Notes: generated from the sequence alone by a model not told the origin. A stretch of DNA of 64,000 nucleotides from IMGVR_UViG_3300017991_000001:124001-188000; one strand, 5' to 3'; shown: positions 7,558 through 50,070, counted from the stretch's first letter. Made by a program: numbers and translations.

Positions 7558-7571
7558 CACGGGGTCCTCAC

Positions 7572-10500
7572 ATGCCTGAAGCCCTTCTCAATGACACGCT
7601 GAGCGCGCCGGTCAAACCAAAACCGGCCGTCACGCATCGCACGTTCGACGACGTGGACACCATGCGCGGCTCCATCTTCGACGGGGTGCTCGACGCCGTG
7701 GCCAAGAAGTACCCGGTCGAGAACACCCGCTATCGCATGGAAGTGGCTGATCTGGGCTACGGCAAGGACAAGCCTTACTCCCTGGAAGACCAGAAAAAAG
7801 CGATCATGACGGGCCAGACGATGACCCGTCAGCTGTCCGGCACCTGGCGCCTGGTCGATAAGGAGTCGGGCAAGGTCGTCGATTCAAAGAAGGCCGTGAT
7901 CGCACACGTGCCCTATGTCACGCCTCGGGGCACCTTCATCTACCGCGGCAACGAGTACACCATCTCCAACCAGATGCGCCTCAAGCCCGGGGTCTACTCC
8001 CGCGTCAAGGACAACGGCATGATCGAGGCCCACTTCAACGTGGCGCCCGGCACCGGCCCGTCCTTCCGCATGTACATGGAGCCGGACACCGGCATCTTCC
8101 GCCTGGCCGTGGGCCAGTCGACGCTGAAGATGTACCCGATCCTGAAGGCCATGGGCGTGCCCGACCGCGAGATCGAGCAGATCTGGGGAAAGGAGCTCCT
8201 GCAGAAGAACACCGAGGCGGCCGACCCGCGCGCCGTCTCCCGCGCCTTCGCCAAGCTGGTGGCGACCCGCGCGGACCAGCCGGGCATCGACGCCGACCGG
8301 GAAGGGCTGGCCAAAGTCGCCCAGTTCACCCAGGTGGACAACGACCTGGTCGTGGGGCCTTCGCGGGTCCACGGCAACGGCTTGTACACGCAGCAGCCCG
8401 TCCCGGCCGGCACGCGCGTCACGCCGGCCTACATCCGCATCGGCATGACCGGCGACACCGAGGCCGACTTCGTGCGTTCCGGGCCGGCGCTGTGGGTCAA
8501 TCACCAGCCCGACGACATGGCCAACACGGTCACGGCCGTAGCACCCGACGGGCGCATGGCCAACCTGATCGCCACCCGCGACATCGAGCCGTGGGAGGAG
8601 ATCACCTGCGACTACGCCAAGAACCACGACACGCTGACGGACTGGGTCAAGCAGCTGTACGACATGGACGAGATGGAGGCCGAGAGGTCGATCTCCAAGA
8701 TCGCCATGTCGAAGACGGCGGCCAAGATCCCGACCGTGGCCGTGGACCTGGACGGCACGCTGGCCGAGATGTACGAGTCCTTCGATCCCAAGAAGATCCC
8801 CGACCCCCGCCCCGGCGCGCGCAAGGCCATGAAGAAGTTCCAGGACAAGGGCTACCGGGTCCTGATCCACACCGTGCGGGGCGACGACCAGCTGACCAAG
8901 GACTGGTTGCACAAGCACGACATCCCCTACGACTACGTCAACGAGAACCCGGACCAGCCCGACACTGCATCCGACAAGCTGATCGCCGACGCCTACGTGG
9001 ACGACCGCGGCGTGCAGGGTGCGCAGGCCTGGCACAAGATCGAGCAACAGGTCTCCGCCAAGCTGGAGAAGGAAGCCAAGATCGGTTTCAAGGACCAGGA
9101 GATGCGGTGGACGAAGTTGTGGTTCCACGGCACCGTGCGGGCCCAGCGCCAGGGCAACGACGGCAAACCGTGGGTCTATGTCCAGGTCCACAAGGGGCTT
9201 ATGGACGCTGCTCGGGACAGCCTCGCCAATGAAGGCGTGGACATCGAGAAGAACCCCAACGACCCGCACATCACGCTTCTGCGCTCCAGCGAAGCCCAGG
9301 AGCTGATCGACCGGCACGGCGAGGAGCAGTGGAAGGGCGCGGCCAAGGACGGCAAGTCCATACGCTTCGCGCTCAGGCGCATGATGTCCCTGATCCCGGA
9401 CGGGTGGGACGGCGTGGACCGGGTCTGGTTCATCGAGGTGGAGAGCCCGGACTTGAAGAAGTACCGGCGCGATCTGGGTTTTCCCGAGCTGCCCATCGGC
9501 GACAACGGCAACGAGCACCGCTTCCACATCACCTTTGCCATCCACCGCTCCAAGAACGAGCCCAAGCGCGCGGCGTACCTGCTTTCCGGTGCCGGCATCG
9601 GAATCGTGGAGCGCGCCTTTGAGAAGGCCGCCGGGGCCACCGACCAGGGCATCGAGCTCAACCAGGTCTTCGACCGCATGGAGCTGGACCCTGACGTGAC
9701 CAAGTCCACGGTCGGTGAGGGCTTCAAGAACGCCGGCATCCCGACGCTGCTCAGGGTCAGCCAGAAGCTCCTGAACATTTCAAAGGGGATGGAGGACACC
9801 GACGACCGGGACTCGCTGGCCTACCAGAAGCTGTACGGTCCCGAGGACTTCTTCACCGAGCGCGTGAACCGCGACGCCGGCCAGACCGGCCGGAAGCTGT
9901 TGTGGCGCGCCACGCTGCGGGGCAACCTGAAACACGTGCCTACGGGGGCGCTTTCCGGGCAAATGTTCGGCGTGCTGCTGAGAAGCGGCATGGGGATGAG
10001 TCTCGAAGAGACCAACCCCATGGACATCATGGACCAGAACCTCCGCGTGATCCGCCTGGGCGAGGGCGGCATTCCGTCGCTGGACTCGGTGCCGGAGGAG
10101 AGCCGAAACGTCCAGCCCAGCCACTTCGCCTACCTGGACCCGATCAGAAGCCCGGAGAGCGAGAAGATCGGCGTGGACTCGCGCGTGTCCCATCGCGTGA
10201 TGAAGGGTTCCGACGGGCAGTTCCACGCGCCCATGTTCAACCCGAAGACAGGCAAGGAGGAGATGGTCTCCGCGGCAAAGGCGGCCGAGTCGGTGGTGGC
10301 CTTTCCGGGCGAGCTGAACAAGAAGCGCGGCAAGGTCAGGGCCATGGTCAAGTCCAGGCAGGTCCAGTACGTGGACCGCAAGGACGTGGACTACGAGGTC
10401 GAAGACCCCAACCAGATGTTCACGCTCAGCTCCAACCTGGTTCCCCTGGTGTCGGGCATCAAGGGCGGGCGCCTGCTGATGGGCGCCAAGTACTTCACCC

Positions 10501-13500
10501 AGGCGCTGCCCCTGCGCGAGCGGGAGGCCCCGCTGGTCCGCAACCTGGAGAGGAGCGGCAAGTCCTTTGACGAGCTGTACGGGGACCGGGTGGGTGCCAT
10601 ACGCGCGCAGGCTCCGGGTGTGGTGACCTCGATGAACAAGAACGGCATCAAGGTCAAGTACGCCGACGGGACCACCAAGGAGCATGAGCTGTATCGCAAC
10701 TTCCCCTTCAACCGGAAGAGCCTGACCGGGGATTGCGAGGTGCTGATCAAGCGTAACGGCGAACTCCTTGTTACGCGACTGGACGCCTACGAATTCGAGC
10801 AGGGGGACCTGACGCTGTCGATCGACCCTGAAACGAAGTTGTCCGCATGGATGGAGGTAACTGGCTATACGCGTCACGAGTGTGACAAGCGCCTGTACCG
10901 GGTCAAAACGGATTCAGGCAGAGCCTTCACAATAACTGAGGATCACAGCTTGATGGTGATGGGCCCTGAAGGCGATCTCGTCCCCGCTTACCCAAGCGCT
11001 TGCGTCGTTGGGCACACGCGCATACCCGTGGCGCTGCCTCGTTTTGAAGGGTGTCGCGGATTTTTCGGCGAGGACAAGCTGGGAACGTTGACCGGCCTGT
11101 ACCTGGCGGAAGGACATATTCCTCAGAACCAGCCCAATCTCATCATCATAGCGGTTGCGCCGGAAGAGCGGGCAGACGAGGTAATGCGGCTGTTTCGCGA
11201 ACTTGGCTGCAAACCTTTCAGGAACGGCGGTTCCGTGTGCGCTACCGATGCTGATTTGAGCAAGTTTCTCATAAAGAACTGCGGACACCTTTCGCACGGC
11301 AAGTTTATCGGCCGACAGCTGATGAATGCCAACATGTCGTTCAAACAGGCTCTGTTACAAGGCTATTTGGCCGGCGACGGCAACTTGTGGGCGGACAGAA
11401 ACGGCACTGTTCAGCTCACGGCAGTGACCGTATCCAAACGTCTTCGCGACGATCTGGTCGTTCTCGCGGGCACTTTGGGAGTCTTCACGACGCTTTTCGA
11501 CGTACCCCGTGACAACGAGGCATGGCGTGACGGCTACGGGCTGCGCTTCCCGAACAAGGAATTGAAGCGGACGCGGTGGATGTTCTACGAGGACCGTCAA
11601 CGCCTGCTCGACGCGTTGGTTAGGGAGAACACGCGCGCGTCCAAGTTTGACGTGGTTCCGGTGCCACGGGAAGCGCGTAAAGCCTTGTATGGCGAGTTGG
11701 AAACTGTGCCGCATTTCGTCTACAAAACGGTTAACAAGGGCTACGTGGCGAAACACAGAGTGCGTACGGGGTCTGGTGTTTTTGGAAAGTGGGGCGCCTC
11801 CGACGTGTCCTGGGACCGGATCAAGTCGATTACGGAGGTGCCCAGCGAGGAATATGTTTATGACCTGTCCGTGGCGGCATCCGAGGCTTTTGCGGTAAAC
11901 GGCGGCGTCGTTGTCCACAACACGTTCATCCACAACACCCCGACCGTTAAGATCGGGGACCGGGTCCGCAAGGGGCAGTTGCTGGCCACCAGCAACTACA
12001 CGGACGACCAGGGCGCGCTGGCGCTGGGCACCAACCTGCGCACCGCCTACGTGCCCTACAAGGGCCTCAACTTCGAGGACGCCATTGTCATCTCCGAGTC
12101 GGCGGCCAAGCGGCTCTCCAGCGAGCACATGTACCAGCACACGCTCGACAAGGAGGACGACACGGTCACGGGGCGCAAGCAGTTCGTCTCGATCTACCCG
12201 ACGACCTTCAACCGCAAGCAGCTAGGCGCGCTGGACGAGCGCGGCGTGGCCAAGGTGGGCACCACCATCAAGTACGGCGACCCCGTGGTGCTGTCCATGC
12301 GCAAGAACCAACCCTCGGCCGTGCATCGGGGCCGCAAGCCCATGTACACCGACACCTCCATCACCTGGGATCACGAGTCCCCGGGCATGGTGACCGGCGT
12401 GGACGAGACGGACGACGGCGGCTTCAACGTGACGGTGAAGGCCTACATGCCGGCACAGGAGGGGGACAAGCTGGCCGGCCGCTACGGCGACAAGGGCGTG
12501 ATCTCCAAGGTCGTGCCCGACGACCAGATGATGCACGACCGGGACGGCAAGCCCTACGAGATCCTGCTCAACCCGTTGGGCATCATCACGCGCGGCAACC
12601 CCTCCCAGGTGTACGAGACGCTGCTGGGCAAGGTGGCCCGCAAGCGGGGCAAGCCCATTAGTGTGCCGGGCTTCATGGACGAGAGCATGGTGGACTACGT
12701 GCGGAAGGAGCTCAGCCGGGAGCGGATGAAGTCGCATGAGGACCTCTACGACCCGACCACCAACCGCAAGGTGCCGGACATCCTGACCGGGGACCGCTTC
12801 ATCTTCAAGCTGCACCACACCGCCGAGTCCAAGGGCAAGGGCCGCGACGTGGGCGCCTACACCTCCGAGGGCATCCCGGCCAAGGGCGGCGAGTTGGGCT
12901 CAAAGCGGGTCAGCAACATGGAGCAGAACGCCCTGCTGTCCCATGGCGCGACCGGCGTGCTGCGCGACGCCCAGGTGGTCAGGGGCCAGCGCAACGACGA
13001 CTTCTGGCGGGCCTTCAGGATGGGCTACACGCCCCCCTCGCCGAGCGTGCCCATGGTCTACGACAAGTTCCTCAACCACCTGCGCGGCGCCGGCATCAAC
13101 GTCAAGAAGAACGGCGACCGGACGCAGCTGCTGGCCATGACCGACAAGGACGTGGACGAGATGACCAGCGGGGAGATCACCGAGGCCAAGACGGTGGACT
13201 CCGACACGCTCAAGGAGATCGACGGTGGGCTGTTCGATCGCGGGCTCACCGGAGGGCACGGGGGCAGCCGCTGGAGCCATATAAAACTGGCCGAACCCAT
13301 GCCCAATCCCGTGATGGAAGAGCCCATTCGTCGCATGTTGGGCCTGACCAAGGTCAAGTTCGAGGAGGTCCTGCAGGGCAAGGAGGACATCGGCGGCGAG
13401 ACGGGCACCAAGGCCATCGGGGCGGCGCTGAAGCGCATCAACCTGGACGAGGCCATCGACAACGCCAAGCTGATCATCAAGGACGGCGCGAAGTCCAAGC

Positions 13501-14504
13501 GGGACAACGCGGTCAAGACGCTGGGCTACTACGAGACGCTCAAGAAGGCCGGGATGAAGCCCAGCGACCTGATGCTCTCCAAGGTGCCGGTGCTGCCGCC
13601 GTCCATGCGCCCGATCACCCAGTACCGGTCCATGCAGCTCTCGGCCGACCCGAACTTCCTGTACCGGGACCTGATCAACGCCAACACGGACCTCAAGGAG
13701 ATCTCGTCCGAGCTGGGCCGCAGGCACGGCGGCAGGGCGCGGTTGCGCACCTACCACGCCTTCAAGGCCGTGACCGGCCTGGGCGACCCCGTGCAGGCCA
13801 AGACCCAGGAGAAGCGGGTCAAGGGTCTCCTGGCCCACGTCTTCGGCTCCAGCCCGAAGTTCGGGATGTTCCAGCGCCGGGTGCTGGGCAGCCCCGTGGA
13901 CGTGGTGGGCCGGGCGGCGATCACGCCCAACCCGAGCCTGAGCATGGACCAGGTGGGCATCCCCGAGGACAAGGTCTGGACGATCTACCGGCCCTTCGTG
14001 GTCCGGCGCCTGATCCGCCGCGGCATGCCGGCGATGGACGCGGCCAAGGCTGCGGCCAACCGCACGGAGGTGGCGGCCAACGCGCTGCAGGAGGAGATTT
14101 CCACGCGGCCCGTTCTGATCAACCGCGCGCCCACGCTGCACCGCTACGGGTTCATGGCGGCCTGGCCGGTGCTGACCAAGGGCAAGACCCTGCAGGTCTC
14201 CCCGACCACGGTGGGCGGCTTCAACGCGGACTTCGACGGCGACGCGATGAACTACCACGTGCCGGTGACCGACGAGGCCGTCGCTGACGCGGTGGACAAG
14301 ATGCTGCCCAGCAAGAACCTGAAGTCCGCGAGGTTCTTCAAGACCCATTACGTGCCCGTCAACGAGTTCCTGATGGGCCTGTACCTGGCCAGTACGGCCA
14401 AGAGCGACAAGCCGTTACGGGTGTTCCGGGACAAGAAGGACGTGCTGGCTGCCTACCAGCGCGGGGACATCGGCCTGGGAGACCGTGTTTCCATAAGGAG
14501 CTGA
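7572..14504 (+). CDS. Phage multi-subunit RNA polymerase: beta fused to the N-terminal half of beta', with SET/HAD/2H insertion and an intein
   Basis: beta motifs GTFIYRGNEYTISNQMRLKPGVYS, GLNFEDAIVISE, GDKLAGRYGDKG, LNPLGIITRGN; beta' motifs PVLPPSMRP, NRAPTLHR and catalytic FNADFDGDAM; ATG 7572 follows the previous stop. Confidence 0.95.
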   Translation: MPEALLNDTLSAPVKPKPAVTHRTFDDVDTMRGSIFDGVLDAVAKKYPVENTRYRMEVADLGYGKDKPYSLEDQKKAIMTGQTMTRQLSGTWRLVDKESGKVVDSKKAVIAHVPYVTPRGTFIYRGNEYTISNQMRLKPGVYSRVKDNGMIEAHFNVAPGTGPSFRMYMEPDTGIFRLAVGQSTLKMYPILKAMGVPDREIEQIWGKELLQKNTEAADPRAVSRAFAKLVATRADQPGIDADREGLAKVAQFTQVDNDLVVGPSRVHGNGLYTQQPVPAGTRVTPAYIRIGMTGDTEADFVRSGPALWVNHQPDDMANTVTAVAPDGRMANLIATRDIEPWEEITCDYAKNHDTLTDWVKQLYDMDEMEAERSISKIAMSKTAAKIPTVAVDLDGTLAEMYESFDPKKIPDPRPGARKAMKKFQDKGYRVLIHTVRGDDQLTKDWLHKHDIPYDYVNENPDQPDTASDKLIADAYVDDRGVQGAQAWHKIEQQVSAKLEKEAKIGFKDQEMRWTKLWFHGTVRAQRQGNDGKPWVYVQVHKGLMDAARDSLANEGVDIEKNPNDPHITLLRSSEAQELIDRHGEEQWKGAAKDGKSIRFALRRMMSLIPDGWDGVDRVWFIEVESPDLKKYRRDLGFPELPIGDNGNEHRFHITFAIHRSKNEPKRAAYLLSGAGIGIVERAFEKAAGATDQGIELNQVFDRMELDPDVTKSTVGEGFKNAGIPTLLRVSQKLLNISKGMEDTDDRDSLAYQKLYGPEDFFTERVNRDAGQTGRKLLWRATLRGNLKHVPTGALSGQMFGVLLRSGMGMSLEETNPMDIMDQNLRVIRLGEGGIPSLDSVPEESRNVQPSHFAYLDPIRSPESEKIGVDSRVSHRVMKGSDGQFHAPMFNPKTGKEEMVSAAKAAESVVAFPGELNKKRGKVRAMVKSRQVQYVDRKDVDYEVEDPNQMFTLSSNLVPLVSGIKGGRLLMGAKYFTQALPLREREAPLVRNLERSGKSFDELYGDRVGAIRAQAPGVVTSMNKNGIKVKYADGTTKEHELYRNFPFNRKSLTGDCEVLIKRNGELLVTRLDAYEFEQGDLTLSIDPETKLSAWMEVTGYTRHECDKRLYRVKTDSGRAFTITEDHSLMVMGPEGDLVPAYPSACVVGHTRIPVALPRFEGCRGFFGEDKLGTLTGLYLAEGHIPQNQPNLIIIAVAPEERADEVMRLFRELGCKPFRNGGSVCATDADLSKFLIKNCGHLSHGKFIGRQLMNANMSFKQALLQGYLAGDGNLWADRNGTVQLTAVTVSKRLRDDLVVLAGTLGVFTTLFDVPRDNEAWRDGYGLRFPNKELKRTRWMFYEDRQRLLDALVRENTRASKFDVVPVPREARKALYGELETVPHFVYKTVNKGYVAKHRVRTGSGVFGKWGASDVSWDRIKSITEVPSEEYVYDLSVAASEAFAVNGGVVVHNTFIHNTPTVKIGDRVRKGQLLATSNYTDDQGALALGTNLRTAYVPYKGLNFEDAIVISESAAKRLSSEHMYQHTLDKEDDTVTGRKQFVSIYPTTFNRKQLGALDERGVAKVGTTIKYGDPVVLSMRKNQPSAVHRGRKPMYTDTSITWDHESPGMVTGVDETDDGGFNVTVKAYMPAQEGDKLAGRYGDKGVISKVVPDDQMMHDRDGKPYEILLNPLGIITRGNPSQVYETLLGKVARKRGKPISVPGFMDESMVDYVRKELSRERMKSHEDLYDPTTNRKVPDILTGDRFIFKLHHTAESKGKGRDVGAYTSEGIPAKGGELGSKRVSNMEQNALLSHGATGVLRDAQVVRGQRNDDFWRAFRMGYTPPSPSVPMVYDKFLNHLRGAGINVKKNGDRTQLLAMTDKDVDEMTSGEITEAKTVDSDTLKEIDGGLFDRGLTGGHGGSRWSHIKLAEPMPNPVMEEPIRRMLGLTKVKFEEVLQGKEDIGGETGTKAIGAALKRINLDEAIDNAKLIIKDGAKSKRDNAVKTLGYYETLKKAGMKPSDLMLSKVPVLPPSMRPITQYRSMQLSADPNFLYRDLINANTDLKEISSELGRRHGGRARLRTYHAFKAVTGLGDPVQAKTQEKRVKGLLAHVFGSSPKFGMFQRRVLGSPVDVVGRAAITPNPSLSMDQVGIPEDKVWTIYRPFVVRRLIRRGMPAMDAAKAAANRTEVAANALQEEISTRPVLINRAPTLHRYGFMAAWPVLTKGKTLQVSPTTVGGFNADFDGDAMNYHVPVTDEAVADAVDKMLPSKNLKSARFFKTHYVPVNEFLMGLYLASTAKSDKPLRVFRDKKDVLAAYQRGDIGLGDRVSIRS
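8346..8615 (+). other. SET domain inserted in RNAP beta
   Basis: PSRVHGNGLYT (GxG), WVNHQPDDMAN (NH motif), IATRDIEPWEEITCDY (EExxxDY). Confidence 0.85.
8727..9053 (+). other. HAD-superfamily phosphatase domain inserted in RNAP beta
   Basis: Motif I VAVDLDGTL, motif II IHTVR, YVNENP, motifs III/IV KLIADAYVDDR. Confidence 0.85.
9078..9551 (+). other. 2H phosphoesterase domain inserted in RNAP beta
   Basis: Two HxT motifs, PHITLL (9267) and FHITFA (9525), with intervening VWFIEVESPDLKKYRRDLG. Confidence 0.8.
10719..11921 (+). mobile_element. Intein (401 aa) with LAGLIDADG homing endonuclease in RNAP beta
   Basis: Starts SLTGDCEVLI, ends YVYDLSVAASEAFAVNGGVVVHN before Thr; LGTLTGLYLAEGH and LLQGYLAGDGN motifs; shifted codon usage; removal restores FPFNRK-TFIHNTPTVKIGDRVRKGQLLA. 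Confidence 0.93.
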
Positions 14505-14529
14505 CAAACAACGTATCGGACCCTATAAT
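14501..14529 (+). promoter_or_regulatory. Sigma70-like promoter
   Basis: CTGACA-N17-TATAAT overlapping the RNAP stop codon, 30 nt before ORF 14560. Confidence 0.65.
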
Positions 14530-14559
14530 CCGCTGCGTTGATGCACAGGGAGAACTATC

Positions 14560-15186
14560 ATGTCCGCGTCCAAAGGTGTTGCCAAGAAGGTGCTGCCCAA
14601 GCCGAAAGGCAAGGAGGGGAAGATTCTCGTGACCACGCCCAAGCCCGACAAGGTTTCCGTACAGGCGGTCAAGACGTCCGCGCTGCGCCGAGCAGAGATC
14701 CTCAGCCTGATCACCAAGGAAGGTTTCGGCTTTGCCACGAAGGAGGGTAGCGCTGCCAAGGGGCTCGTGAACGCTGCCGGCAAGCTGCGCTCCGGGGCTC
14801 GAAAGGGCCTCAAGTCTTACGGCAAACTGGTCGGTAGCAAGACGAAGCCCGGAATTGCTACAGACAAGGAACGGAAGTTGTTCAACAAGGCCAAGAAGAA
14901 GGGCGTCAAGAGCAAGAAAGGCGCCAAGGCTCTCGATAAGTTCAAGCGCGAGGCTTCCAAGAAGACCGTGAAGCACTTGAACCGTTCGCAGAAATTCTTC
15001 GGAAAGCTGAAGGACGACAAAGGCAATCGCATTAAACTCAGCTCCGCTCAGCTGTTGGGCCACTTCCTGAAAAGGGCGCTGACCAAGCAGGGTTCGGAGC
15101 AGATCATCAAGCAGGCTTCGGACCGCGAACGGGCGGCCCGTGTGCTTTCAGCCGTCCACAAGGCGGCACGCAGCTATGGACGCTAA
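14560..15186 (+). CDS. Very Lys-rich basic protein, possibly DNA-binding/internal head protein
   Basis: RBS GGGAG; dense Lys content; IIKQA motif. Confidence 0.65.
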   Translation: MSASKGVAKKVLPKPKGKEGKILVTTPKPDKVSVQAVKTSALRRAEILSLITKEGFGFATKEGSAAKGLVNAAGKLRSGARKGLKSYGKLVGSKTKPGIATDKERKLFNKAKKKGVKSKKGAKALDKFKREASKKTVKHLNRSQKFFGKLKDDKGNRIKLSSAQLLGHFLKRALTKQGSEQIIKQASDRERAARVLSAVHKAARSYGR

Positions 15187-15388
15187 GGCGTACCTCATCA
15201 AGCAGGCGCTGGGGATGAGTGGCCTCCAGATGCAGATGGAGATGCCCTTTTCACCACCCCGGCCCGTGGCGCACATGGACACGCTGGAGGACCGCCGTAC
15301 CCGGGAAAAGATGCTGGCGGACCTGCCGCCATCCAGACGTGAGGGGATCTTAAGGGCCATACAGGCCAGAATGAGGGCCAGACGATGA
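15176..15388 (+). CDS. Small protein with AYLIKQA leader
   Basis: Begins MDAKAYLIKQALG; overlaps both neighbours. Confidence 0.6.
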   Translation: MDAKAYLIKQALGMSGLQMQMEMPFSPPRPVAHMDTLEDRRTREKMLADLPPSRREGILRAIQARMRARR

Positions 15389-16167
15389 ACAGACTCAACC
15401 CGCAACTGATCAAGCTGGCACGCGGCGCGATCCGCAAGGCGGAGAAGACGGCTGCCAAGAAGGAAGCCTTCGTGCCCATGTCACCCGCCGGTGCGGCTCC
15501 CGCACCTCCGGGTGCGCCCATGCCGCCTCCACCGGCAGGCGCGCCAGCGGCCCCCATGCCGCCCGATCCCATGATGGCCGGCGCCATGCCGGCTGACCCC
15601 ATGGCTGCAGGTGGGGCACCGCCGGCTGAAGGCGCGCCCATGGACCCGGCGGCTGCCGGTGCCGGCGGCGAGACCATGACGGTTGCGCTGCCCGACCTGA
15701 TCCAACTCTTCACCATGATCGCCCAGCAGGGCGGCGCAGGCGGAGCGCCCGCTCCCGCGCCCGCCGAAGGCGGCGGTGGCGAAGGCGGCGCCGAGCCCGA
15801 GAAGAAGCCCAGCGCGGCGGCGGGCAAGGACGCCAAGATCGACATGATCCTGTCCAAGCTGGACCAGCTGATCGGGGCGCTGGGCATGGCCGACATGATG
15901 GCGCCCGCCGAGGGCGGGGCAGCCATGCCTCCCGCAGAGACGGGGATGGAAGGCGAAAACGCCCTGGCTCCCGCCGAAGGCGGCATGGCTCCCGAAGCAC
16001 CCATCCCGGCGATCGATGCCGGCGGCGCGGCACCGCCCCCGCCCACGGGTGGCATGATGGTGGCTGCCGCGGAGGGCGAGAAGAAGGCATCCGGCAACGG
16101 CAACGTATCCAGGGCGAAGATGCTCAGCCGCATTTGCAGCAACCTGAGGAGTGGCCAGCGACGCTGA
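15385..16167 (+). CDS. Pro/Ala/Met-rich low-complexity putative head protein
   Basis: MNRLNPQLIKLAR, EKTAAKKEA, EKKAS motifs. Confidence 0.65.
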   Translation: MNRLNPQLIKLARGAIRKAEKTAAKKEAFVPMSPAGAAPAPPGAPMPPPPAGAPAAPMPPDPMMAGAMPADPMAAGGAPPAEGAPMDPAAAGAGGETMTVALPDLIQLFTMIAQQGGAGGAPAPAPAEGGGGEGGAEPEKKPSAAAGKDAKIDMILSKLDQLIGALGMADMMAPAEGGAAMPPAETGMEGENALAPAEGGMAPEAPIPAIDAGGAAPPPPTGGMMVAAAEGEKKASGNGNVSRAKMLSRICSNLRSGQRR

Positions 16168-16415
16168 TGAACGTGCGTGTGCAGGGCGAGGGCTTCGAGC
16201 CCGTGCAGGTTTTGGACAATGTCCAGTCCGTGGTCATTCTGGACGACCACGGGCAGCCGGTCATCGCCGTGCAGCGCACGAAGGAGAATCAGATCCTTTC
16301 CATCAAAGCCGGGGACCCCCATTTCGACAAGACCTTGGAGGCGATGGGCATCGGGCTGAACGCCCGGGTGGTCAGTGGGCATTTTCCGAAAGGGGTACCA
16401 AGTGATCCGTCCTGA
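16167..16415 (+). CDS. Small hypothetical protein
   Basis: TGATG coupling to the upstream gene; MNVRVQGEGFEP... Confidence 0.55.
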   Translation: MNVRVQGEGFEPVQVLDNVQSVVILDDHGQPVIAVQRTKENQILSIKAGDPHFDKTLEAMGIGLNARVVSGHFPKGVPSDPS

Positions 16416-18252
16416 TTATGTCCCTCCCCTCCTGCCCGGCGTGGGGCCCCTGTCTTTTGAGAAGGCGGCGGTTGCCCCCTTGGTGGCGGCTGCCCTGCCC
16501 ACGGTCGGTAGAGTGGCGGGAGGGTGGCTTTTGCGGCGAGGGGGAGCAGCACTGCTTCGGCGGTTGGGGCAGCGAGTTATCCCTGCGCTGCGCAGGTTTT
16601 TTGGAAGAGGTACTTCAGCGGCACGTTCCGCTCTGCGTGCTGACATTACCCCCAGGAAAGCTTTTGAACGCATACCAGCACAAGTAAAGTTGCCGAAGCG
16701 TGATCCCATCACAGGCAAGAAAGCACCTCGTCACATGCGTGGTTGGCAGGATCGCTCCATGATTACAGAAGGTGTGGCACCTGGAACGCGTCCGCCTGCG
16801 GCGCCTGCCGCAGCGTCAGGGAAGCCGGGATTGGCTACACGTTTCGTTGACTGGGCCACGGGCCGCAAAAATGTGGACCCTTCCACGGGCAAAACACCTG
16901 GCGTGATGGGTCAGGCCATGAACGTGGGGGGCAAGGTATTGAACACCGCGCTCTACGGGAGCATAGGGGCTGACCTTTTGGGTTCACTGGGTTCGTTGTG
17001 GAAAGGCGGTTCGCCACCTGTAGCGTCCGGGTCTGCGGGACATCAAATGTGGAACTATCCCAAGACGGCCGAGCGTAGAGCTGCCTTCGAGGAGGGTGTG
17101 GACCGGTTTTGCAAGGAAGCCGACTTCGACGACGAGGACAAGCAAGCATTATACACGTTGATCGAAACAGCCGCTGAGTTGGAAAAGCGGGGCGTGGACA
17201 CTTGGGAGCTCCTTAAAAAGCCGGTTGTGGACCCTTTGGGCACGTGGATAGGCGTGGGGCATACTCTGCTGTCCGGGCTGGGAGGAATAGGTTCGGATAA
17301 GGGTATCTTAGGAGCAATGGAACACACGGGCAAGAAGTATATGAGAAGTGGACCAAATCCGTTCGAGAAAGGAATTTCAAGTATCTTTTGGGGCGACCCT
17401 GGCGCACGTGCTGAAAGTGCTGCCAAGAAAAATCAAACCCCCGAGCAGCGGGAACAGGCTTCTCGCAGGGATCAGGTTCGCGGCTTGAGCGAAGAGATCA
17501 TGAAGGACGAGGGGCTACGCGAAGACATTGAGAGGCGAGGGTTCAGGGAACTAAGGCGCTGGGCCAAATCCAGGAACGTGCCGTTGGGCGTGGCACGCGA
17601 CGCGCTGAAGGGTACGACTTCGGTGCATCCTCAACTCGCTGGTGCGCTAAAACAACCTACGAAGCCCGGTGTTACGCCCGGTTCACGGCTCATTGGTGTA
17701 CGAAGCGGAGCTAGGCAAACACAAGGTGGCTCCGTCCCACTCAGGCTGGGTCCAATGCCTGCGGCGAGGCCTCCGGCTTCAAATACACCTGGAGCGGCGC
17801 CCGCACCAACCGAACCCGCCACGGCGCCGGCGGCAAGTACATCCCCTTCTGCCGCCGAGGCGGCTTCATCGTTCAAGAACCAGGTGAACGCCCGGAACCC
17901 CGGCGCGAAGTGGCTCAACCTGAGCAAGGGCGAAGGTGCGATCCTGCCCGTGGATCAGTCGGCCGGCCCGAACCTGCAGCGCAGGGCCCAGACAAACGCC
18001 TTCTTCAACATGCAGCCGCAGCAGGGCAACGTGACCATGGCCCAGCGTGGCGGCACGGGCGTGGAGACGCTCACCCCGCGTACGCAGTCAAGCAACATGC
18101 CCTTCGCGGAGGGTACGGGTTCGCCGTCCACGGGCATGACCGACTTCAGCGACTGGATGAAGACCACCTACGGCGACACCAGTAAGATGACCGACCCCAG
18201 CAACATGATCTCTACGGGTGTGGACATGAAGACGCCCAAGCCGAACGTTTAG
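16402..18252 (+). CDS. Large mosaic putative virion protein
   Basis: Likely GTG start 16402 (track start 16375); FEKAA, PKTA, CKEA motifs; atypical codon usage over about 16450-17850. Confidence 0.6.
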   Translation: MIRPDYVPPLLPGVGPLSFEKAAVAPLVAAALPTVGRVAGGWLLRRGGAALLRRLGQRVIPALRRFFGRGTSAARSALRADITPRKAFERIPAQVKLPKRDPITGKKAPRHMRGWQDRSMITEGVAPGTRPPAAPAAASGKPGLATRFVDWATGRKNVDPSTGKTPGVMGQAMNVGGKVLNTALYGSIGADLLGSLGSLWKGGSPPVASGSAGHQMWNYPKTAERRAAFEEGVDRFCKEADFDDEDKQALYTLIETAAELEKRGVDTWELLKKPVVDPLGTWIGVGHTLLSGLGGIGSDKGILGAMEHTGKKYMRSGPNPFEKGISSIFWGDPGARAESAAKKNQTPEQREQASRRDQVRGLSEEIMKDEGLREDIERRGFRELRRWAKSRNVPLGVARDALKGTTSVHPQLAGALKQPTKPGVTPGSRLIGVRSGARQTQGGSVPLRLGPMPAARPPASNTPGAAPAPTEPATAPAASTSPSAAEAASSFKNQVNARNPGAKWLNLSKGEGAILPVDQSAGPNLQRRAQTNAFFNMQPQQGNVTMAQRGGTGVETLTPRTQSSNMPFAEGTGSPSTGMTDFSDWMKTTYGDTSKMTDPSNMISTGVDMKTPKPNV

Positions 18253-18261
18253 GGGTTGTGA

Positions 18262-20100
18262 ATGGAAACGACGGTTGGACAGCTCCTGCTGAACGAGGCC
18301 TTGCCCGAGGACATGCGCGACTACCGCCGTGTCATCGACAAGAAGTCCCTCGCGCCGCTGTTCACCGAACTGGCCGAGAAGCACCCCGACCACTACGCCG
18401 AGATCAACCAGCGCCTCCACACCCTGGCCGCCGACGCGGTGACGGGGCACGGCGGCGTGACCAGCCTCACGCTCGACTCGCTGCGCACGCCGCTGGGCAT
18501 CGAGCGCGCCCGCAAGGAACTGCAAAAGAAGATCGACAAGGTGCTGGACGGACCCGGCACCCAGGAACAGAAGAATGAAAGAATCGTGGGACTGATCTCC
18601 GACGCGCTGGAGCCCGTCACGCAGGAGAATTACAAAGAGAACCTGGCGGCCGACAACCCGCTGGCCGTGCAGGTTTCCTCCGGCAGCCGGGGCAACCCCG
18701 CCGGCCTGCGCTCCCTGACAGCAGGGGATCTGCTTTTCACGGACCACAAGGACCGCCCGATCCCGGTGCCGGTCCTTACGTCTTTCTCGGAAGGGTTGGA
18801 CCCCGTGCAGTACTGGGCCGGCGCGTACACGGCCCGCAAGGGCACCATCGCCACCAAGTTTGCCACCCCCAAGTCGGGGTTCCTGGGCAAGCAGCTCGCG
18901 GCGGCCTCCCACCGCCTGGTGGTCACCGAAAAGGATTGCGGCACGCCCAACGGCCTCGTGGTGGACGCTCACGACCCGGACAACGAGGGGGCCGTGCTGG
19001 CTTCGGACGCTGGCGCGTTCAAACGCGGCGAGGTGCTGGACCCCAATAACATGCGCAAGCTGAAGGACCAGATCGTGGTGCGTTCGCCCATGACCTGCCA
19101 GGCGGAGAACGGCATCTGCCAGCAGTGCGCCGGGGTGCGCGAGCGAGGCGGCTTCCCGCCTATCGGCGACAACGTCGGGATGGCCGCCGCACACGCCATC
19201 TCCGAACCCATCGGGCAGGGTCAGCTGAACGTCAAACACGGCGGCGGGAAGCTGAAAAAGCGCGACGAGGCCAAGACGGGCATCGACCTGATCAACCAAC
19301 TCGTGCAGGTTCCCAAGACTTTTGCCGGGGCTGCTGCGATATCAACCGTTGACGGTCGAGTCGAGCGGGTGGAGAATGCTCCACAAGGCGGCCAGTACAT
19401 TCGGATTGCGGGTACCGAACATTGGGTGCCGGCAGGCGAGGACCTGGTTGTCAAGCGTGGGGACAAGGTGGAGGCCGGGGACGTCCTTTCCAGCGGCATC
19501 CCGAACCCGGCCGAGATCACGCGCTTCAAGGGGATCGGGGAGGGCCGGCGGTACTTCATGGAGATGTTCCGCAAGACGCTGGAGGAGAACCGCTTCAAGG
19601 CGCACCGGCGCAACGTGGAACTGCTCTCCAGGGGCCTGATCAACCACGTCAGGGTGACGGATCTGGACGGACCGGCGGACACCCTGCCCGACGACGTGGC
19701 CGAGTACGACGACATCGTGCGCGGATATCAGGCCCGTTATGGCTCCAAAACGGTTGCCCCGAAGCGTGCCCTTGGGTTATACCTGGAACGTCCCGCACTG
19801 CACTATTCGATCGGGACGCGCGTCACGCCCCGCGTGGCCAAGAGTTTGCAGGACCACGGCGTAGAAAATGTGCTGGCCCATGCCGACGAACCAAGCTTCG
19901 TACCGGAGATGACACGGGCGATGGAAACCCTCTCACACTCCAGCGACTGGATGGTGCGATTGGGCGGTTTCCATTTGAAAAAGTCCTTAATGGGGGCGTT
20001 GCACCGTGGACGAGAGTCCAAGGAGCACGGCACCTCATTCATCCCTCCACTCGCGAAGGGCGTCGAGTTCGGCAAGCCAAAAGGCGACGTCGGATACTGA
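18262..20100 (+). CDS. RNA polymerase beta' C-terminal half
   Basis: SGSRGN, SFSEGL, bridge helix ARKGTIATKFATPKSGFLGKQL, Zn site KDCGT...RSPMTCQAENGICQQC, trigger loop AAAHAISEPIGQGQLNVKHGG. Confidence 0.93.
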   Translation: METTVGQLLLNEALPEDMRDYRRVIDKKSLAPLFTELAEKHPDHYAEINQRLHTLAADAVTGHGGVTSLTLDSLRTPLGIERARKELQKKIDKVLDGPGTQEQKNERIVGLISDALEPVTQENYKENLAADNPLAVQVSSGSRGNPAGLRSLTAGDLLFTDHKDRPIPVPVLTSFSEGLDPVQYWAGAYTARKGTIATKFATPKSGFLGKQLAAASHRLVVTEKDCGTPNGLVVDAHDPDNEGAVLASDAGAFKRGEVLDPNNMRKLKDQIVVRSPMTCQAENGICQQCAGVRERGGFPPIGDNVGMAAAHAISEPIGQGQLNVKHGGGKLKKRDEAKTGIDLINQLVQVPKTFAGAAAISTVDGRVERVENAPQGGQYIRIAGTEHWVPAGEDLVVKRGDKVEAGDVLSSGIPNPAEITRFKGIGEGRRYFMEMFRKTLEENRFKAHRRNVELLSRGLINHVRVTDLDGPADTLPDDVAEYDDIVRGYQARYGSKTVAPKRALGLYLERPALHYSIGTRVTPRVAKSLQDHGVENVLAHADEPSFVPEMTRAMETLSHSSDWMVRLGGFHLKKSLMGALHRGRESKEHGTSFIPPLAKGVEFGKPKGDVGY

Positions 20101-30821: not shown

Positions 30822-30887
30822 TTGGTGCGGGCAGCTGCCAAGAGCGCATCCCGCGAGACGTAAGGCCAATTGATAAGGAGACAGGCC

Positions 30888-48434: not shown

Positions 48435-50070
48435 AAACTTCTACCGCGTCGATGTGCAGGTGCGGGCCGAGATCGGCGGGCAATCCGTGCCCGTGAACAG
48501 CGTCTCCGTGCGCTACTCGATCGACCGTATACCGGAAGCCGCTATTACCATACCAGTGGGCCGCTCAGCGCGCGGGGACGCCGTACACGTGGGTGCGGGT
48601 GTTTTCGGCACGCTGCCTCCCTTTACGTCCATGCGTATCTACGCGCTTGCTGAGGCGACGCCCGCCGGTCGCGACGCTCCGCGAAAAGGAGGATTGCCGC
48701 AAGGGGAGTTCCTTCTGTTCGATGGGTACGTGTCCGCGCCGTCCATGCATCTCGATGTTTCAGGCGGCATGGGCAGTGCCACGCTCCGTGTACAAGGTTT
48801 TGGAAGGCTGGGCGGCTTGGCTGGAGCAACCACGCTGGGCGTGGGCGTGACCTTGAACAAGCCTCCGGGCGGTACGGACGTGTTTATGAGTAGTTTTGGT
48901 CAGAACGAGAAGAACAACCACCTGACGATTACTGACCAGCTCATGAAGAAGGGGTATTACAGAGACATCGGTGAAGCCGTTTTGGAACTGTTTGACGACG
49001 CGCTGAACGTGACCAGCGTTTGGGCCCACGATCAGCCGGGTTCGGCCAACGCTGGAGCTGCCGCGGACCGTGCCCACGCGAGTCTGGTGTCGGGCGCCAG
49101 CTTCGACCTGCTCAAGCGCGCGTCTCAGGTCAATCAGCAGGCGTTCGGACGCATGGTGGCGGAAACATTAGCGAATGTTTTCTGGGGCGTGTGGTCGGGC
49201 GTCGACAAAGCTGGAAACTTCTCGCCCAGCGCGGGCGGCGATTTGTGGGAAGTGATGCAGAAGCTCCAAGGCGTTTTCTACTTCCACGTCGTACCCACGG
49301 CGGCCACGGATTACATGGCGCCGATTACCCCCAACCTTGGCGGCGACCCGAACAACCTCTTCCCGGCCGGTGAATATTCCATCATAGGCGGGGGTGAGGA
49401 TTTCTTTGAAGGAGGGGGCGCCCGTTACATGTACGCCTATATCACACAGGTGGGTTTGGCGGCGTCGAGTTTCCAATCCTCTCCGTGGAATGACGGTTCG
49501 TCGGTAACCGGGCGCGTAGGGTACGCGAACTTGTCGTTGGGCGATGAAGACTTCGTGTTGGACGGTGGGCGCATCTTCATGTGCGGTTCACCGCCGTGGC
49601 TCATACCTGCCGGTTCACAAGCCAAGGACACACTGAATCCGTTCAAGGGCATCAGCGACGCGGCAGGTTCCGGCGGTTGGTTTAGCAGTGGCAAGCGGGC
49701 GTCGGAAATCGCCATGTTCGGTTCAACGCTGGGTGACCGTGTCGCCAGAACCATCCTGCATGAGCTGGTCTTTGAGCACCGTAAGCTTGCCGTTGCCGGC
49801 CGCCTGCGCACGGACGTGGCACCCGGCAACATCGTACGAGTTACGCTGCCCGCGGAAGGGTTCATCGGTCAACCCGGTGACAACCTGTATGGGATGGCAA
49901 GCGATGTTATCCTGAGGATTATGACTCAGGAAGGCGGCAGTTTGGCGCGAACGGAGGTGGGCATTTCGCACCTGCGCACCGAAAGCGAGCACGAACGCCT
50001 CACGTTGGACGAACACCCCGTATACGGGGAGACTTGGTCGGGCGTGCCGTTAGTCGTGGAGGAGAGCTGA
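48418..50070 (+). CDS. Baseplate hub-like protein
   Basis: N-terminal VNSVSVRYSIDRIPEAAI...LLFDGYV and C-terminal LRTDVAPG..VRV hub-like pattern; atypical codon usage. Confidence 0.5.
   Translation: MAIRLENFYRVDVQVRAEIGGQSVPVNSVSVRYSIDRIPEAAITIPVGRSARGDAVHVGAGVFGTLPPFTSMRIYALAEATPAGRDAPRKGGLPQGEFLLFDGYVSAPSMHLDVSGGMGSATLRVQGFGRLGGLAGATTLGVGVTLNKPPGGTDVFMSSFGQNEKNNHLTITDQLMKKGYYRDIGEAVLELFDDALNVTSVWAHDQPGSANAGAAADRAHASLVSGASFDLLKRASQVNQQAFGRMVAETLANVFWGVWSGVDKAGNFSPSAGGDLWEVMQKLQGVFYFHVVPTAATDYMAPITPNLGGDPNNLFPAGEYSIIGGGEDFFEGGGARYMYAYITQVGLAASSFQSSPWNDGSSVTGRVGYANLSLGDEDFVLDGGRIFMCGSPPWLIPAGSQAKDTLNPFKGISDAAGSGGWFSSGKRASEIAMFGSTLGDRVARTILHELVFEHRKLAVAGRLRTDVAPGNIVRVTLPAEGFIGQPGDNLYGMASDVILRIMTQEGGSLARTEVGISHLRTESEHERLTLDEHPVYGETWSGVPLVVEES

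What the first reader, a model, noticed from the sequence alone, without database searches (positions are those of the whole stretch)
7572..20100. Unusual RNAP architecture: beta-beta'(N) fusion, separate beta'(C), N-terminal beta' zinc-binding domain missing
Seen: beta runs directly into beta' with no stop; GLFDRGLTGG-HGGS-RWSHIKL lacks the Cys4 element that bacteria have between these motifs; the split falls shortly after NADFDGD; the second Zn site is retained. Five ORFs and a promoter lie between the halves, and no alpha subunit is visible here. Inference: a streamlined, bacterial-type phage RNAP with a split pattern distinct from cellular enzymes.
Basis: partly seen in the sequence, partly recalled or inferred. 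Interest (0 to 1): 0.68.

Follow-up and report, generated by a model that had tools for sequence, protein, structure and literature searches.

The report
Fused, split, enzyme-carrying phage RNA polymerase
A 211-kb environmental phage encodes a bacterial-type RNA polymerase whose beta subunit is fused to the first half of beta', lacks alpha, omega and the first zinc domain, and carries an intein and three extra enzyme domains inside beta; the layout is real and shared by dozens of related phages.

Summary
One ORF (7572-14504, 2310 aa) reads from beta straight into the N-terminal half of beta'. It ends 86 residues after NADFDGD. The C-terminal half of beta' is a separate gene (18262-20100). The Cys4 zinc ribbon is absent and the second zinc site is kept. 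Five ORFs and one promoter-like site lie between the halves. No alpha or omega is found in the complete 211-kb genome. Independent contigs from four metagenome runs cover the junction, the stop and the restart with no differences, so this is not an assembly artefact.

The layout is a lineage trait. The junction is continuous in 75 of 77 related IMG/VR loci, the split is present in 66, and two distant relatives have one unsplit ORF. This is the known mReC phage RNAP lineage, whose cultured relative is Salmonella phage Arash, where these proteins are abundant in virions.

The split lies close to the cyanobacterial/plastid and phiKZ-type site, and beta-beta' fusions exist in Helicobacter. Only the combination is new.

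A phage sigma-like factor (50070-50768) is predicted to dock on the beta' clamp helices.

The parts
7572..14504 (+). Gene for the beta / beta'(N-half) fusion protein. It is 2310 aa, or about 1909 aa after intein removal.
   Evidence: Single open frame. Pfam finds Rpb2_3, Rpb2_6, Rpb1_1 and Rpb1_2 in one frame. The public gene call P0164 is 2310 aa.
7572..8327 (+). Beta N-terminal part, up to the lobe.
   Evidence: Aligns to cyanobacterial beta residues 26-229 and Thermus beta residues 75-204.
8328..9632 (+). 435-aa insert in the beta lobe holding three domains: SET (about 8322-8669), capless HAD phosphatase (about 8712-9080) and 2H phosphoesterase (about 9117-9554).
   Evidence: Scanned alone, Pfam SET scores 24.9 bits against a 22.4 cut-off and 2H-SAK scores 30.6 against 27. 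The motifs GxG, NH, DY, DLDGT, DD and two HIT are intact. The AF2 model has pLDDT 81.7. Fold matches: MLL1/EZH2 SET at Z 8.9, BT_0820 HAD at Z 12.9, T4 Pnkp phosphatase at Z 9.0. The insert is absent from most relatives, where the flanks abut.
9633..10718 (+). Beta middle part (fork region).
   Evidence: Pfam Rpb2_3. Aligns to E. coli beta residues 422-707.
10719..11921 (+). 401-aa intein with a LAGLIDADG homing endonuclease. It begins with Ser1 ('SLTGDCEVL'), has block B 'TEDH', and ends 'VVVHN' followed by +1 Thr.
   Evidence: Pfam Intein_splicing 55 bits and LAGLIDADG_3 36 bits. Motifs located. Absent from Arash and most relatives, but present at the same site in L003, L043, L067 and L072. 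Its GC3 is 0.69 against 0.89 for the gene.
11922..13112 (+). Beta C-terminal part (DPBB with 'GDKLAGRYGDKGV', flap, clamp end 'GAGINV') and a short linker.
   Evidence: Pfam Rpb2_6, E 4e-48. Motifs located.
13113..14501 (+). Beta' N-terminal half. It includes the zinc-ribbon-less segment (13224-13289), the clamp helices and the active site NADFDGD (14223-14243).
   Evidence: phmmer matches bacterial beta' and cyanobacterial gamma at E 1e-46 to 1e-52. No Cys4 in any of about 60 aligned relatives.
14501..14529 (+). Sigma70-like promoter match CTGACA-17-TATAAT, overlapping the beta'N stop codon.
   Evidence: 11 of 12 positions match. It is the only such site in the genome. This is a consensus match only; function is not shown.
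14560..15186 (+). 208-aa Lys-rich ORF, found only in this phage and its near-identical strain.
   Evidence: No Pfam or PHROG family. Among the related loci it matches only L002.
15140..15388 (+). 82-aa ORF, found only in this phage and its near-identical strain.
15385..16167 (+). 260-aa Ala/Pro/Gly-rich ORF, conserved between the beta' halves across the lineage.
   Evidence: tblastn without the low-complexity filter gives matches in 69-72 loci. They were seen lying between the halves in the eleven loci whose gaps I read, and share an N-terminal 'NPELL..A' motif.
16167..16415 (+). About 82-aa ORF (93 aa if read from 16134), conserved between the beta' halves across the lineage.
   Evidence: Homologues lie between the halves in 49 of 50 loci where they were detected.
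16375..18252 (+). 625-aa ORF of unknown function with GC3 of 0.64, found only in this phage and its near-identical strain.
18262..20100 (+). Gene for the beta' C-terminal half (612 aa): bridge helix near aa 140, second zinc site (18937-19128) and trigger loop (19195-19248).
   Evidence: Pfam Rpb1_5. phmmer matches bacterial beta' at E 2e-44, and residue 22 aligns with residue 12 of cyanobacterial RpoC2.
50070..50768 (+). Divergent sigma70-family factor (232 aa) encoded in the structural module.
   Evidence: Homologous to Arash gp10 (E 2e-14), which carries Sigma70_r3 above the cut-off. It has 331 homologues, many with r3/r4 hits. It is predicted to dock on the beta' clamp helices: score 0.68, best control 0.05.

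Best explanation
These are the core genes of the only multisubunit RNA polymerase of a 211-kb tailed phage. The phage belongs to the mReC lineage of RNAP-encoding Caudovirales, whose cultured relative is Salmonella phage Arash.

How I think it works, with shown and inferred steps marked:

1. Gene 1 makes one chain: beta, then a linker of about 6 residues, then beta' up to just past the catalytic double-psi barrel. The fusion is shown. I infer that this covalent tether takes over the job of the missing alpha dimer and omega, which is bringing beta and beta' together.

2. A 401-aa intein with intact splicing motifs has to excise itself before the beta barrel is whole. The motifs are shown. Splicing is inferred.

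3. Gene 2 supplies the rest of beta' (bridge helix, trigger loop, second zinc site). It joins non-covalently at a surface hairpin that also tolerates a cut in cyanobacteria, plastids and phiKZ-like phages. In an unsplit relative the two pieces align end to end.

4. The first zinc ribbon is replaced throughout the lineage by a short 'TGGH-GxxRW' loop.

5. A phage sigma70-family protein binds the clamp helices of beta'N and gives promoter specificity. This rests on homology and a complex model that passed its controls.

6. In this clade the beta lobe is an insertion hot spot. Here it carries SET, HAD and 2H domains whose catalytic motifs are all intact. These domains also occur in free-standing 'Swiss army knife' RNA-repair proteins and in virion-delivered polyvalent proteins.

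7. I infer that the polymerase is packaged in the virion and injected, and that it transcribes early genes while carrying these enzymes into the cell. The enzymes could heal cleaved RNA ends or destroy nucleotide signals, and methylate a lysine on an unknown target. Two facts support packaging. The genes sit between portal and major capsid genes, as in Arash. In Arash the homologous proteins are among the most abundant in purified virions.
For: - Domain content and motifs.
- Fusion conserved: continuous in frame in 75 of 77 related loci.
- Split conserved: 66 loci have beta'C in a separate ORF 0.9-6.7 kb downstream, and 2 loci are unsplit.
- Clean cut: the pieces align end to end with the unsplit relative L070.
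- Zinc ribbon missing across the lineage.
- No alpha or omega, and only one RNAP set, in the complete genome.
- Not an artefact: independent contigs carry the same sequence.
- Sigma. The complex model scores 0.68 against a best control of 0.05. That mark was reached by 58 of 80 solved complexes and 2 of 110 mismatched pairs. The runs agree and the partner's pLDDT is at least 75. The interface is beta' residues 2063-2107 (the clamp helices) against sigma residues 41-52 and 83-89.
- Synteny with Arash from portal through RNAP to major capsid protein.
- Arash virion proteomics: gp206 is the most detected protein, and gp216, the sigma factor gp10 and a helicase are also detected (PMC10585845).
- Insert. 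The same site holds 184-676 aa inserts in at least 16 other fused RNAP proteins.
- HAD homologues occur in free-standing multi-domain proteins, in a portal-like fusion and in an ART-PolyVal protein.
Against: - No transcription, splicing or packaging data exist for this phage. No RNA run holds it.
- Arash is only about 29-33% identical. Its authors note that abundant infection proteins may simply co-purify with virions.
- The sigma complex may score high because solved holoenzymes resemble it, so it shows likeness, not binding.
- This sigma copy does not itself reach Pfam cut-offs for sigma regions.
- A distant or structural substitute for alpha cannot be excluded by profile searches. Use of host alpha is not excluded either.
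- The position of the insert in the beta lobe comes from sequence alignment ranges, not from a structure.
- The substrates of the SET, HAD and 2H domains are unknown.
Confidence: 0.72

Rival explanations
1. The fusion or the split is an assembly or frameshift artefact, or the gene is a decaying pseudogene.
For: The window comes from a single metagenome-assembled record, and the ORF is unusually long.
Against: A contig from another sample differs at 1 of 21,227 bases. Logan contigs from 4 runs of 4 studies cover the junction, the stop and the restart with 0 differences. The layout is conserved in 75 and 66 related loci. GC3 is 0.89 and the catalytic motifs are intact.
Confidence: 0.02
2. The phage enzyme is not self-sufficient. 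Beta-beta'N and beta'C assemble on the host's alpha dimer, and perhaps omega, forming a hybrid polymerase.
For: No phage alpha or omega was found. The enzyme is bacterial-type by sequence.
Against: phiKZ- and AR9-type phage RNAPs work without alpha or omega (PMC7598289). The covalent beta-beta' tether removes much of the need for alpha. If the enzyme is packaged as in Arash, it must be assembled without fresh host alpha, although alpha from the previous host could be co-packaged. Not tested here; the host is unknown.
Confidence: 0.13
3. The polymerase is not a virion protein. It is made after infection and transcribes middle or late genes, while the host RNAP starts the programme.
For: There is a single near-consensus sigma70 promoter in the genome, so host RNAP could act somewhere. 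Arash's authors allow that abundant proteins may co-purify. There is only one RNAP set, unlike phiKZ's virion and non-virion pair.
Against: The genes lie inside the head module between portal and major capsid genes in both phages. In Arash, beta-beta'N is the top virion protein with 128 unique peptides, and beta'C, sigma and a helicase are also detected. Only one sigma70-like promoter exists in 211 kb, so host RNAP can hardly run the early programme.
Confidence: 0.3
4. The SET-HAD-2H block is a structural decoration like the lineage-specific inserts of bacterial beta, with no enzymatic role.
For: Bacterial beta lobes tolerate large non-catalytic inserts (own knowledge). Relative domain orientation is uncertain, with pTM 0.41.
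Against: All three catalytic signatures are intact. The HAD domain is 50-69% identical to domains of free-standing enzymes. Domain content at the site varies (2H alone, HAD+2H, SET+2H, SET+HAD), as expected for functional modules. GC3 of 0.93 indicates long residence under selection.
Confidence: 0.15

Closest known systems
mReC lineage: multisubunit-RNAP-encoding Caudovirales (Weinheimer & Aylward 2020, PMC7481178); cultured relative Salmonella phage Arash (PMC10585845)
   Same: Large environmental tailed phages that encode beta and beta' detectable with cellular models. Gene order from portal through RNAP to major capsid protein is shared with Arash. Arash also has a 1525-aa beta-beta'N gene, intervening genes, then a 606-aa beta'C gene.
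   Different: Neither paper describes the fusion, the beta' split, the missing zinc ribbon, inteins or inserted enzymes. In Arash both genes are annotated simply as 'subunit beta'. This phage adds an intein and SET-HAD-2H. I did not place the window in their tree.
Cyanobacterial/plastid rpoC1 (gamma) | rpoC2 split, and the phiKZ/AR9-type phage beta' split
   Same: Beta' is cut after the catalytic barrel. Beta'N ends at gamma residue 554-558 and beta'C residue 22 aligns with RpoC2 residue 12. PMC7598289 reports the same boundary in phiKZ-like enzymes, which also lack alpha and omega.
   Different: By the alignment ranges the phage cut lies about 10-20 aligned residues earlier, apparently just before the 'TTVG' element that opens beta'C here. 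Cyanobacterial beta is not fused to gamma. phiKZ-type enzymes also split beta, have no sigma, and are far more divergent.
Natural rpoB-rpoC fusions of Helicobacter and Wolbachia (own knowledge, not tested here)
   Same: Beta's C-terminus runs in frame into beta's N-terminus through a short linker.
   Different: Those fusions keep beta' whole, keep the zinc ribbon, and keep alpha and omega.
AR9-type virion RNAP with an HD phosphohydrolase fused to a beta fragment (PMC7598289), and phage 'polyvalent' injected proteins
   Same: A nucleic-acid or nucleotide-processing enzyme domain is attached covalently to a virion-carried protein. HAD homologues of the insert occur in a portal-like fusion and in an ART-PolyVal protein.
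   Different: Here the domains are inserted inside the beta lobe rather than at an end. There are three of them, including a SET methyltransferase.

Membership tests
Multisubunit RNAP beta (Rpb2/RpoB) | Catalytic barrel domain with the conserved Lys-bearing loop | tested here: met
   Pfam Rpb2_6, E 4e-48. 'GDKLAGRYGDKGV' at 12462-12500.
Multisubunit RNAP beta' (Rpb1/RpoC) | NADFDGD metal-binding loop, bridge helix and trigger loop | tested here: met
   NADFDGD at 14223-14243. Rpb1_2 lies in gene 1 and Rpb1_5 in gene 2. Bridge helix and trigger loop motifs were located.
Bacterial-type beta' | N-terminal Cys4 zinc ribbon between 'GLF' and 'GHIEL' | tested here: not met
   No Cys in 13224-13289. 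The same holds in about 60 aligned relatives.
Bacterial-type beta' | Second zinc site (four Cys) | tested here: met
   C226, C279, C286 and C289 of beta'C.
Bacterial RNAP core (alpha2-beta-beta'-omega) | Alpha and omega subunits encoded | tested here: not met
   PF01000, PF01193, PF03118 and PF01192 give no match at E<=1 in the complete genome, while the control genomes ring. Host subunits could not be tested.
mReC phage RNAP lineage | RNAP groups with other RNAP-encoding Caudovirales apart from cellular enzymes | tested here: inconclusive
   There are 79 related IMG/VR loci at 36-67% identity and Arash at 29-33%. A tree was built among phage sequences only. No cellular sequences were included, and the MCP and TerL family criteria of the paper were not checked.
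Cyanobacterial-type beta' split | Cut at the gamma|beta' boundary after the catalytic barrel | tested here: inconclusive
   The cut falls in the same inter-domain hairpin, offset by about 10-20 aligned residues as judged from HMMER ranges. No direct three-way alignment was possible.
Intein with LAGLIDADG endonuclease | Ser/Cys at position 1, block B TxxH, C-terminal HN followed by Ser/Thr/Cys, and two LAGLIDADG motifs | tested here: met
   S1098, 'TEDH', 'VVVHN'+T1499, 'LYLAEGH' and 'GYLAGDGN'. Pfam Intein_splicing and LAGLIDADG_3. Splicing activity cannot be tested here.
SET-domain methyltransferase | SET fold with GxG, NH and catalytic Tyr motifs | tested here: met
   Pfam SET 24.9 bits against a 22.4 cut-off on the isolated insert. 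Motifs located. Fold Z 8.9 to MLL1/EZH2, and a Foldseek match to the viral SET protein vSET. Activity and substrate not tested.
HAD phosphatase (capless, Pnkp-like) | DxDxT nucleophile motif, motif II Thr, motif IV DD, Rossmannoid fold | tested here: met
   'DLDGT', 'HTVRG' and 'VDDRG'. Z 12.9 to BT_0820, 9.0 to the T4 Pnkp phosphatase and 8.6 to Pnkp1.
2H phosphoesterase (2H-SAK) | Two HxT/S motifs | tested here: met
   'HITL' and 'HITF'. Pfam 2H-SAK 30.6 bits against a 27 cut-off. No fold match was listed because the HAD and SET domains filled the tables.
Sigma70 family (ORF 50070-50768) | Regions 2, 3 and 4 recognisable, and binding to the beta' clamp helices | tested here: inconclusive
   This copy is below Pfam cut-offs (r3 E 0.026, r4 E 0.1). 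Its homologues and Arash gp10 pass for r3/r4. The complex model passes its controls: 0.68 against 0.05.

The most novel reading that the evidence does not exclude
The virion-packaged polymerase serves as a delivery vehicle. The beta lobe is a modular docking site where this clade swaps enzyme domains (2H, HAD, SET and others). These domains are injected with the DNA as part of the RNAP itself. From the first seconds of infection they would repair or pre-empt host attacks on RNA or nucleotide signals and methylate a host or phage protein. A further possibility is that the two small genes kept between the beta' halves across the lineage are new subunits that stand in for alpha and omega.
Probability: 0.3. 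Interest if true: 0.85.

Novelty: new variant of a known kind. Interest (0 to 1): 0.64.

Why it matters
- It is a natural bacterial-type RNAP that appears to work without alpha, omega and the first zinc domain. Beta and beta' are tethered, and beta' is cut at the same weak point used by cyanobacteria and phiKZ-like phages. That makes the minimal assembly requirements of multisubunit RNAPs directly testable with two or three recombinant proteins.
- The lineage shows gene fusion, fission, intein invasion and domain insertion acting on one essential enzyme. Unsplit, split and further-split forms are all available for comparison.
- A SET methyltransferase and an RNA-end-healing pair built into the beta subunit is, as far as I could find, undescribed. 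It points to a new way for phages to couple early transcription with counter-defence.
- It also marks a permissive site in the beta lobe for engineered insertions.

Tried and rejected
- A megablast of the gene against 50,697 phage records found nothing. Only protein-level relatives exist.
- PHROG and Pfam scans of the five intervening ORFs and most neighbours gave no family.
- The first AF2 model of the insert used a HAD-dominated alignment and was confident only for the HAD domain. It was redone with 16 RNAP-embedded inserts added.
- Rfam and tRNA scans of the window found nothing, so there is no sign of introns in or near the genes.
- Literature: the mReC paper, the jumbo-phage RNAP review, the jumbo-phage comparative paper, the Arash paper, and the Carin-5 and SP-15 papers do not describe this architecture. 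The hypermodified-DNA link of more distant RNAP-bearing phages (IME392, RHph_TM30) was not pursued. Those phages have a different gene layout: an unfused whole beta' in RHph_TM30 and several fragments in IME392.
- Rooting: with Arash and Vibrio phage D181 (both split) as outgroup, the unsplit pair L069/L070 is sister to all other split loci. Whether unsplit is ancestral or a re-fusion cannot be decided, and long branches add doubt.
- The large representative-protein search was not used, because no claim here rests on absence of relatives.
- I could not obtain cyanobacterial sequences as objects for a direct alignment. The split-site comparison therefore rests on HMMER coordinate ranges.

Full report
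**What the window is.** The window is bases 124,001-188,000 of a 211,084-bp IMG/VR virus record. The record has direct terminal repeats (123 bp exact), CheckV completeness of 100% and 63% G+C. Genes run almost entirely on the + strand.

**The observation.**
- An open frame runs from 7428 to 14504. The upstream gene ends at 7557, and the public gene call for this exact protein is 2310 aa (P0164).
- Pfam places beta domains (Rpb2_3; Rpb2_6 at E 4e-48) and beta' domains (Rpb1_1; Rpb1_2 with NADFDGD) in this one frame.
- Beta's last conserved block, 'GAGINV', ends near nt 13103. About six residues later comes 'TQLLAMTDKDV', which HMMER aligns with the start of bacterial beta'.
- The segment 'GGLFDRGLTGGHGGSRWSHIKL' (13224-13289) has no cysteine where bacterial beta' carries its Cys4 ribbon.
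- The frame stops at 14502-14504, 86 residues after NADFDGD (14223-14243).
- A 612-aa gene at 18262-20100 supplies Rpb1_5, the bridge helix, four Cys of the second zinc site (C226, C279, C286, C289) and the trigger loop.
- Five ORFs with coding-like third-position G+C lie between the two genes.
- A CTGACA-17-TATAAT match overlaps the stop codon. It is the only such site in the whole genome.

**Not an artefact.**
- L002, a contig from a different metagenome, differs from the window at 1 of 21,227 bases.
- The stretch 12500-18400 is held by seven runs from at least six studies of sediment and seawater.
- Logan contigs from four runs cover the beta/beta' junction, the stop and the beta'C start with no differences and no indels.
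- No RNA run holds the stretch, so expression is untested.

**A lineage trait.** A search of IMG/VR with the beta'N part gave 79 loci at 36-67% identity, many on contigs of 160-235 kb.
- Fusion: beta's C-terminus continues in frame into beta'N in 75 of 77 loci. L067 has separate genes, and L068 has extra sequence at the junction.
- Split: beta'C is a separate ORF 0.9-6.7 kb downstream (median 1.6 kb) in 66 loci.
- Unsplit: two distant relatives from different samples, L069 and L070, carry beta, beta'N and beta'C as one ORF of 2126 and 2051 aa.
- Clean cut: in L070 the sequence runs '...VKVGG-HETTIGRL...' exactly where the window has '...VSIRS*' and 'METTVGQL...'. The split is a cut with nothing lost.
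- Zinc ribbon: the ribbon-less 'GGLFD..TGGH.G..RW' loop is shared by about 60 distinct relatives.
- Direction of change: in a tree rooted on Arash and Vibrio phage D181, which are both split, the unsplit pair is sister to the rest. The direction of change is therefore undecided.
- Further fission: several loci cut beta again (L038, L057, L060, L053). In Vibrio phage D181 a homing-endonuclease gene sits in such a cut. Inteins are common in both genes, with beta'C ORFs of up to 2254 aa.

**Between the halves.** Most relatives keep two small genes there. One is an Ala/Pro/Gly-rich protein of about 230 aa, which corresponds to the window's 15385-16167. The other is a protein of about 80 aa, which corresponds to 16167-16415. 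The Lys-rich 208-aa ORF, the 82-aa ORF and the 625-aa ORF are found only in this phage.

- Intein. A 401-aa intein lies at 10719-11921. It has Ser1, block B 'TEDH', two LAGLIDADG motifs and 'HN' followed by Thr. It interrupts beta just before its catalytic barrel. Its GC3 of 0.69, against 0.89 for the gene, suggests a later arrival.
- Insert, position. A 435-aa block lies at 8328-9632, where most relatives' flanks abut. By alignment ranges this is in the beta lobe, in the region where proteobacteria carry their own lineage-specific insert (inference).
- Insert, content.
  - SET domain: Pfam over cut-off; GxG, NH and DY motifs; fold Z 8.9 to MLL1/EZH2.
  - Capless HAD phosphatase: DLDGT and DD motifs; Z 12.9 to BT_0820; 9.0 to the T4 Pnkp phosphatase.
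  - 2H phosphoesterase: two HIT motifs; Pfam 2H-SAK over cut-off.
  - These rest.
- Insert, distribution.
  - The same site holds 184-676 aa in at least 16 other fused RNAP proteins, with varying mixes of 2H, HAD, SET and DUF5661.
  - In the window's clade of seven loci, five carry a 2H domain.
  - The HAD domain is 50-69% identical to domains in free-standing multi-domain proteins that also carry 2H, InPase, kinase, NUDIX or acylphosphatase modules.
  - It also matches a portal-like fusion and an ART-PolyVal protein.

**Other subunits.** No alpha NTD, alpha CTD or omega is found at E<=1 in the complete genome, while all control genomes ring. There is a single copy of each catalytic barrel.

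A homologue of Arash's sigma factor lies at 50070-50768 in the tail/baseplate region.
- This copy is below Pfam cut-offs. Its 331 homologues often carry Sigma70_r3/r4, and Arash gp10 passes for r3.
- A complex model of beta'N with this protein scored 0.68, against 0.05 for the best of three controls. That mark was reached by 58 of 80 solved complexes and 2 of 110 mismatched pairs.
- The three runs agree in at least 80% of contacts, and the partner's pLDDT is at least 75.
- The interface is the beta' clamp helices against the sigma N-terminal helices.
- This may reflect memory of solved holoenzymes. It shows likeness, not binding.

**Context and mechanism.** The cultured relative Salmonella phage Arash has the same order of genes: portal, a small gene, a 1525-aa beta-beta'N gene, nine genes, then a 606-aa beta'C gene, with the major capsid gene following the next structural genes.
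- In its virion proteome the fused protein was the most detected of all. Beta'C, the sigma factor and a helicase were also abundant (PMC10585845).
- I therefore think the window's enzyme is most likely a virion-carried, alpha-less, sigma-dependent polymerase.
- On that view the covalent tether substitutes for the assembly platform, and the lobe insert brings extra enzymes into the cell.
- Packaging, self-sufficiency and the activities of the insert are all inferences.

**Comparison with the known.**
- The lineage itself is known as mReC (PMC7481178). That paper, the Arash paper and the two jumbo-phage RNAP papers I read do not describe the fusion, the split, the ribbon loss, the inteins or the inserts.
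- The beta' cut is close to the cyanobacterial/plastid and phiKZ-type cut. Beta-beta' fusion is known in Helicobacter and Wolbachia (own knowledge).
- AR9's virion RNAP, with an HD domain fused to a beta fragment, is the nearest precedent for an enzyme attached to a phage RNAP.

**Verdict.** It is a new variant of a known kind.

Noticed in passing
window 14501-14529, with ORF 14560-15186: The only near-consensus sigma70 promoter match in the 211-kb genome (TATAAT itself occurs just 8 times). It lies directly upstream of a 208-aa very Lys-rich, histone-H1-like ORF. This may be a host-RNAP-read early gene, or a possible substrate of the SET domain.
   Followed up: partly
genome 121684-123815 (L085:290-2421), just upstream of the window: A Methyltransf_11 gene is followed by a 514-aa protein with a LigD_N 3'-phosphoesterase domain (over cut-off) and a weak ATP-dependent ligase / RNA-ligase core. 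With the HAD and 2H domains in beta, this looks like a nucleic-acid end-repair toolkit.
   Followed up: partly
window 15385-16167 and 16167-16415: A two-gene cassette is kept between the beta' halves in most of the lineage: an Ala/Pro/Gly-rich protein of about 230 aa and a protein of about 80 aa. Their function is unknown. They could be head-module proteins or polymerase accessory subunits.
   Followed up: partly
L069:6674-13051 and L070:6854-13006: Two distant relatives from different samples encode beta and the whole of beta' as a single ORF of 2126 and 2051 aa.
   Followed up: partly
L038, L057, L060, L053/L077, L067; Vibrio phage D181 (L084:7578-13092): Beta is cut again at other sites in some relatives. 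In D181 a homing-endonuclease gene sits in the cut. Many beta'C ORFs are 1000-2250 aa, probably because of inteins.
   Followed up: partly
window 10719-11921 and 16375-18252: The intein (GC3 0.69) and the 625-aa ORF (GC3 0.64) have much lower third-position G+C than the surrounding genes (0.83-0.93). This suggests they arrived more recently.
   Followed up: no
window 842-1774, 3552-4364, 30870-31835, 52082-53731: Other genes in the window: a collagen-repeat protein, a sulfotransferase, the major head protein (homologue of Arash gp226) and a baseplate J-like protein. Most other large ORFs in the window match no Pfam or PHROG family.
   Followed up: no
P0188 and P0189 (proteins): Homologues of the insert's HAD domain are fused to a Mu-like portal family domain (PF06074) in one protein and to an ART-PolyVal domain in another protein of 2935 aa. 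Both are proteins expected to travel in virions.
   Followed up: no
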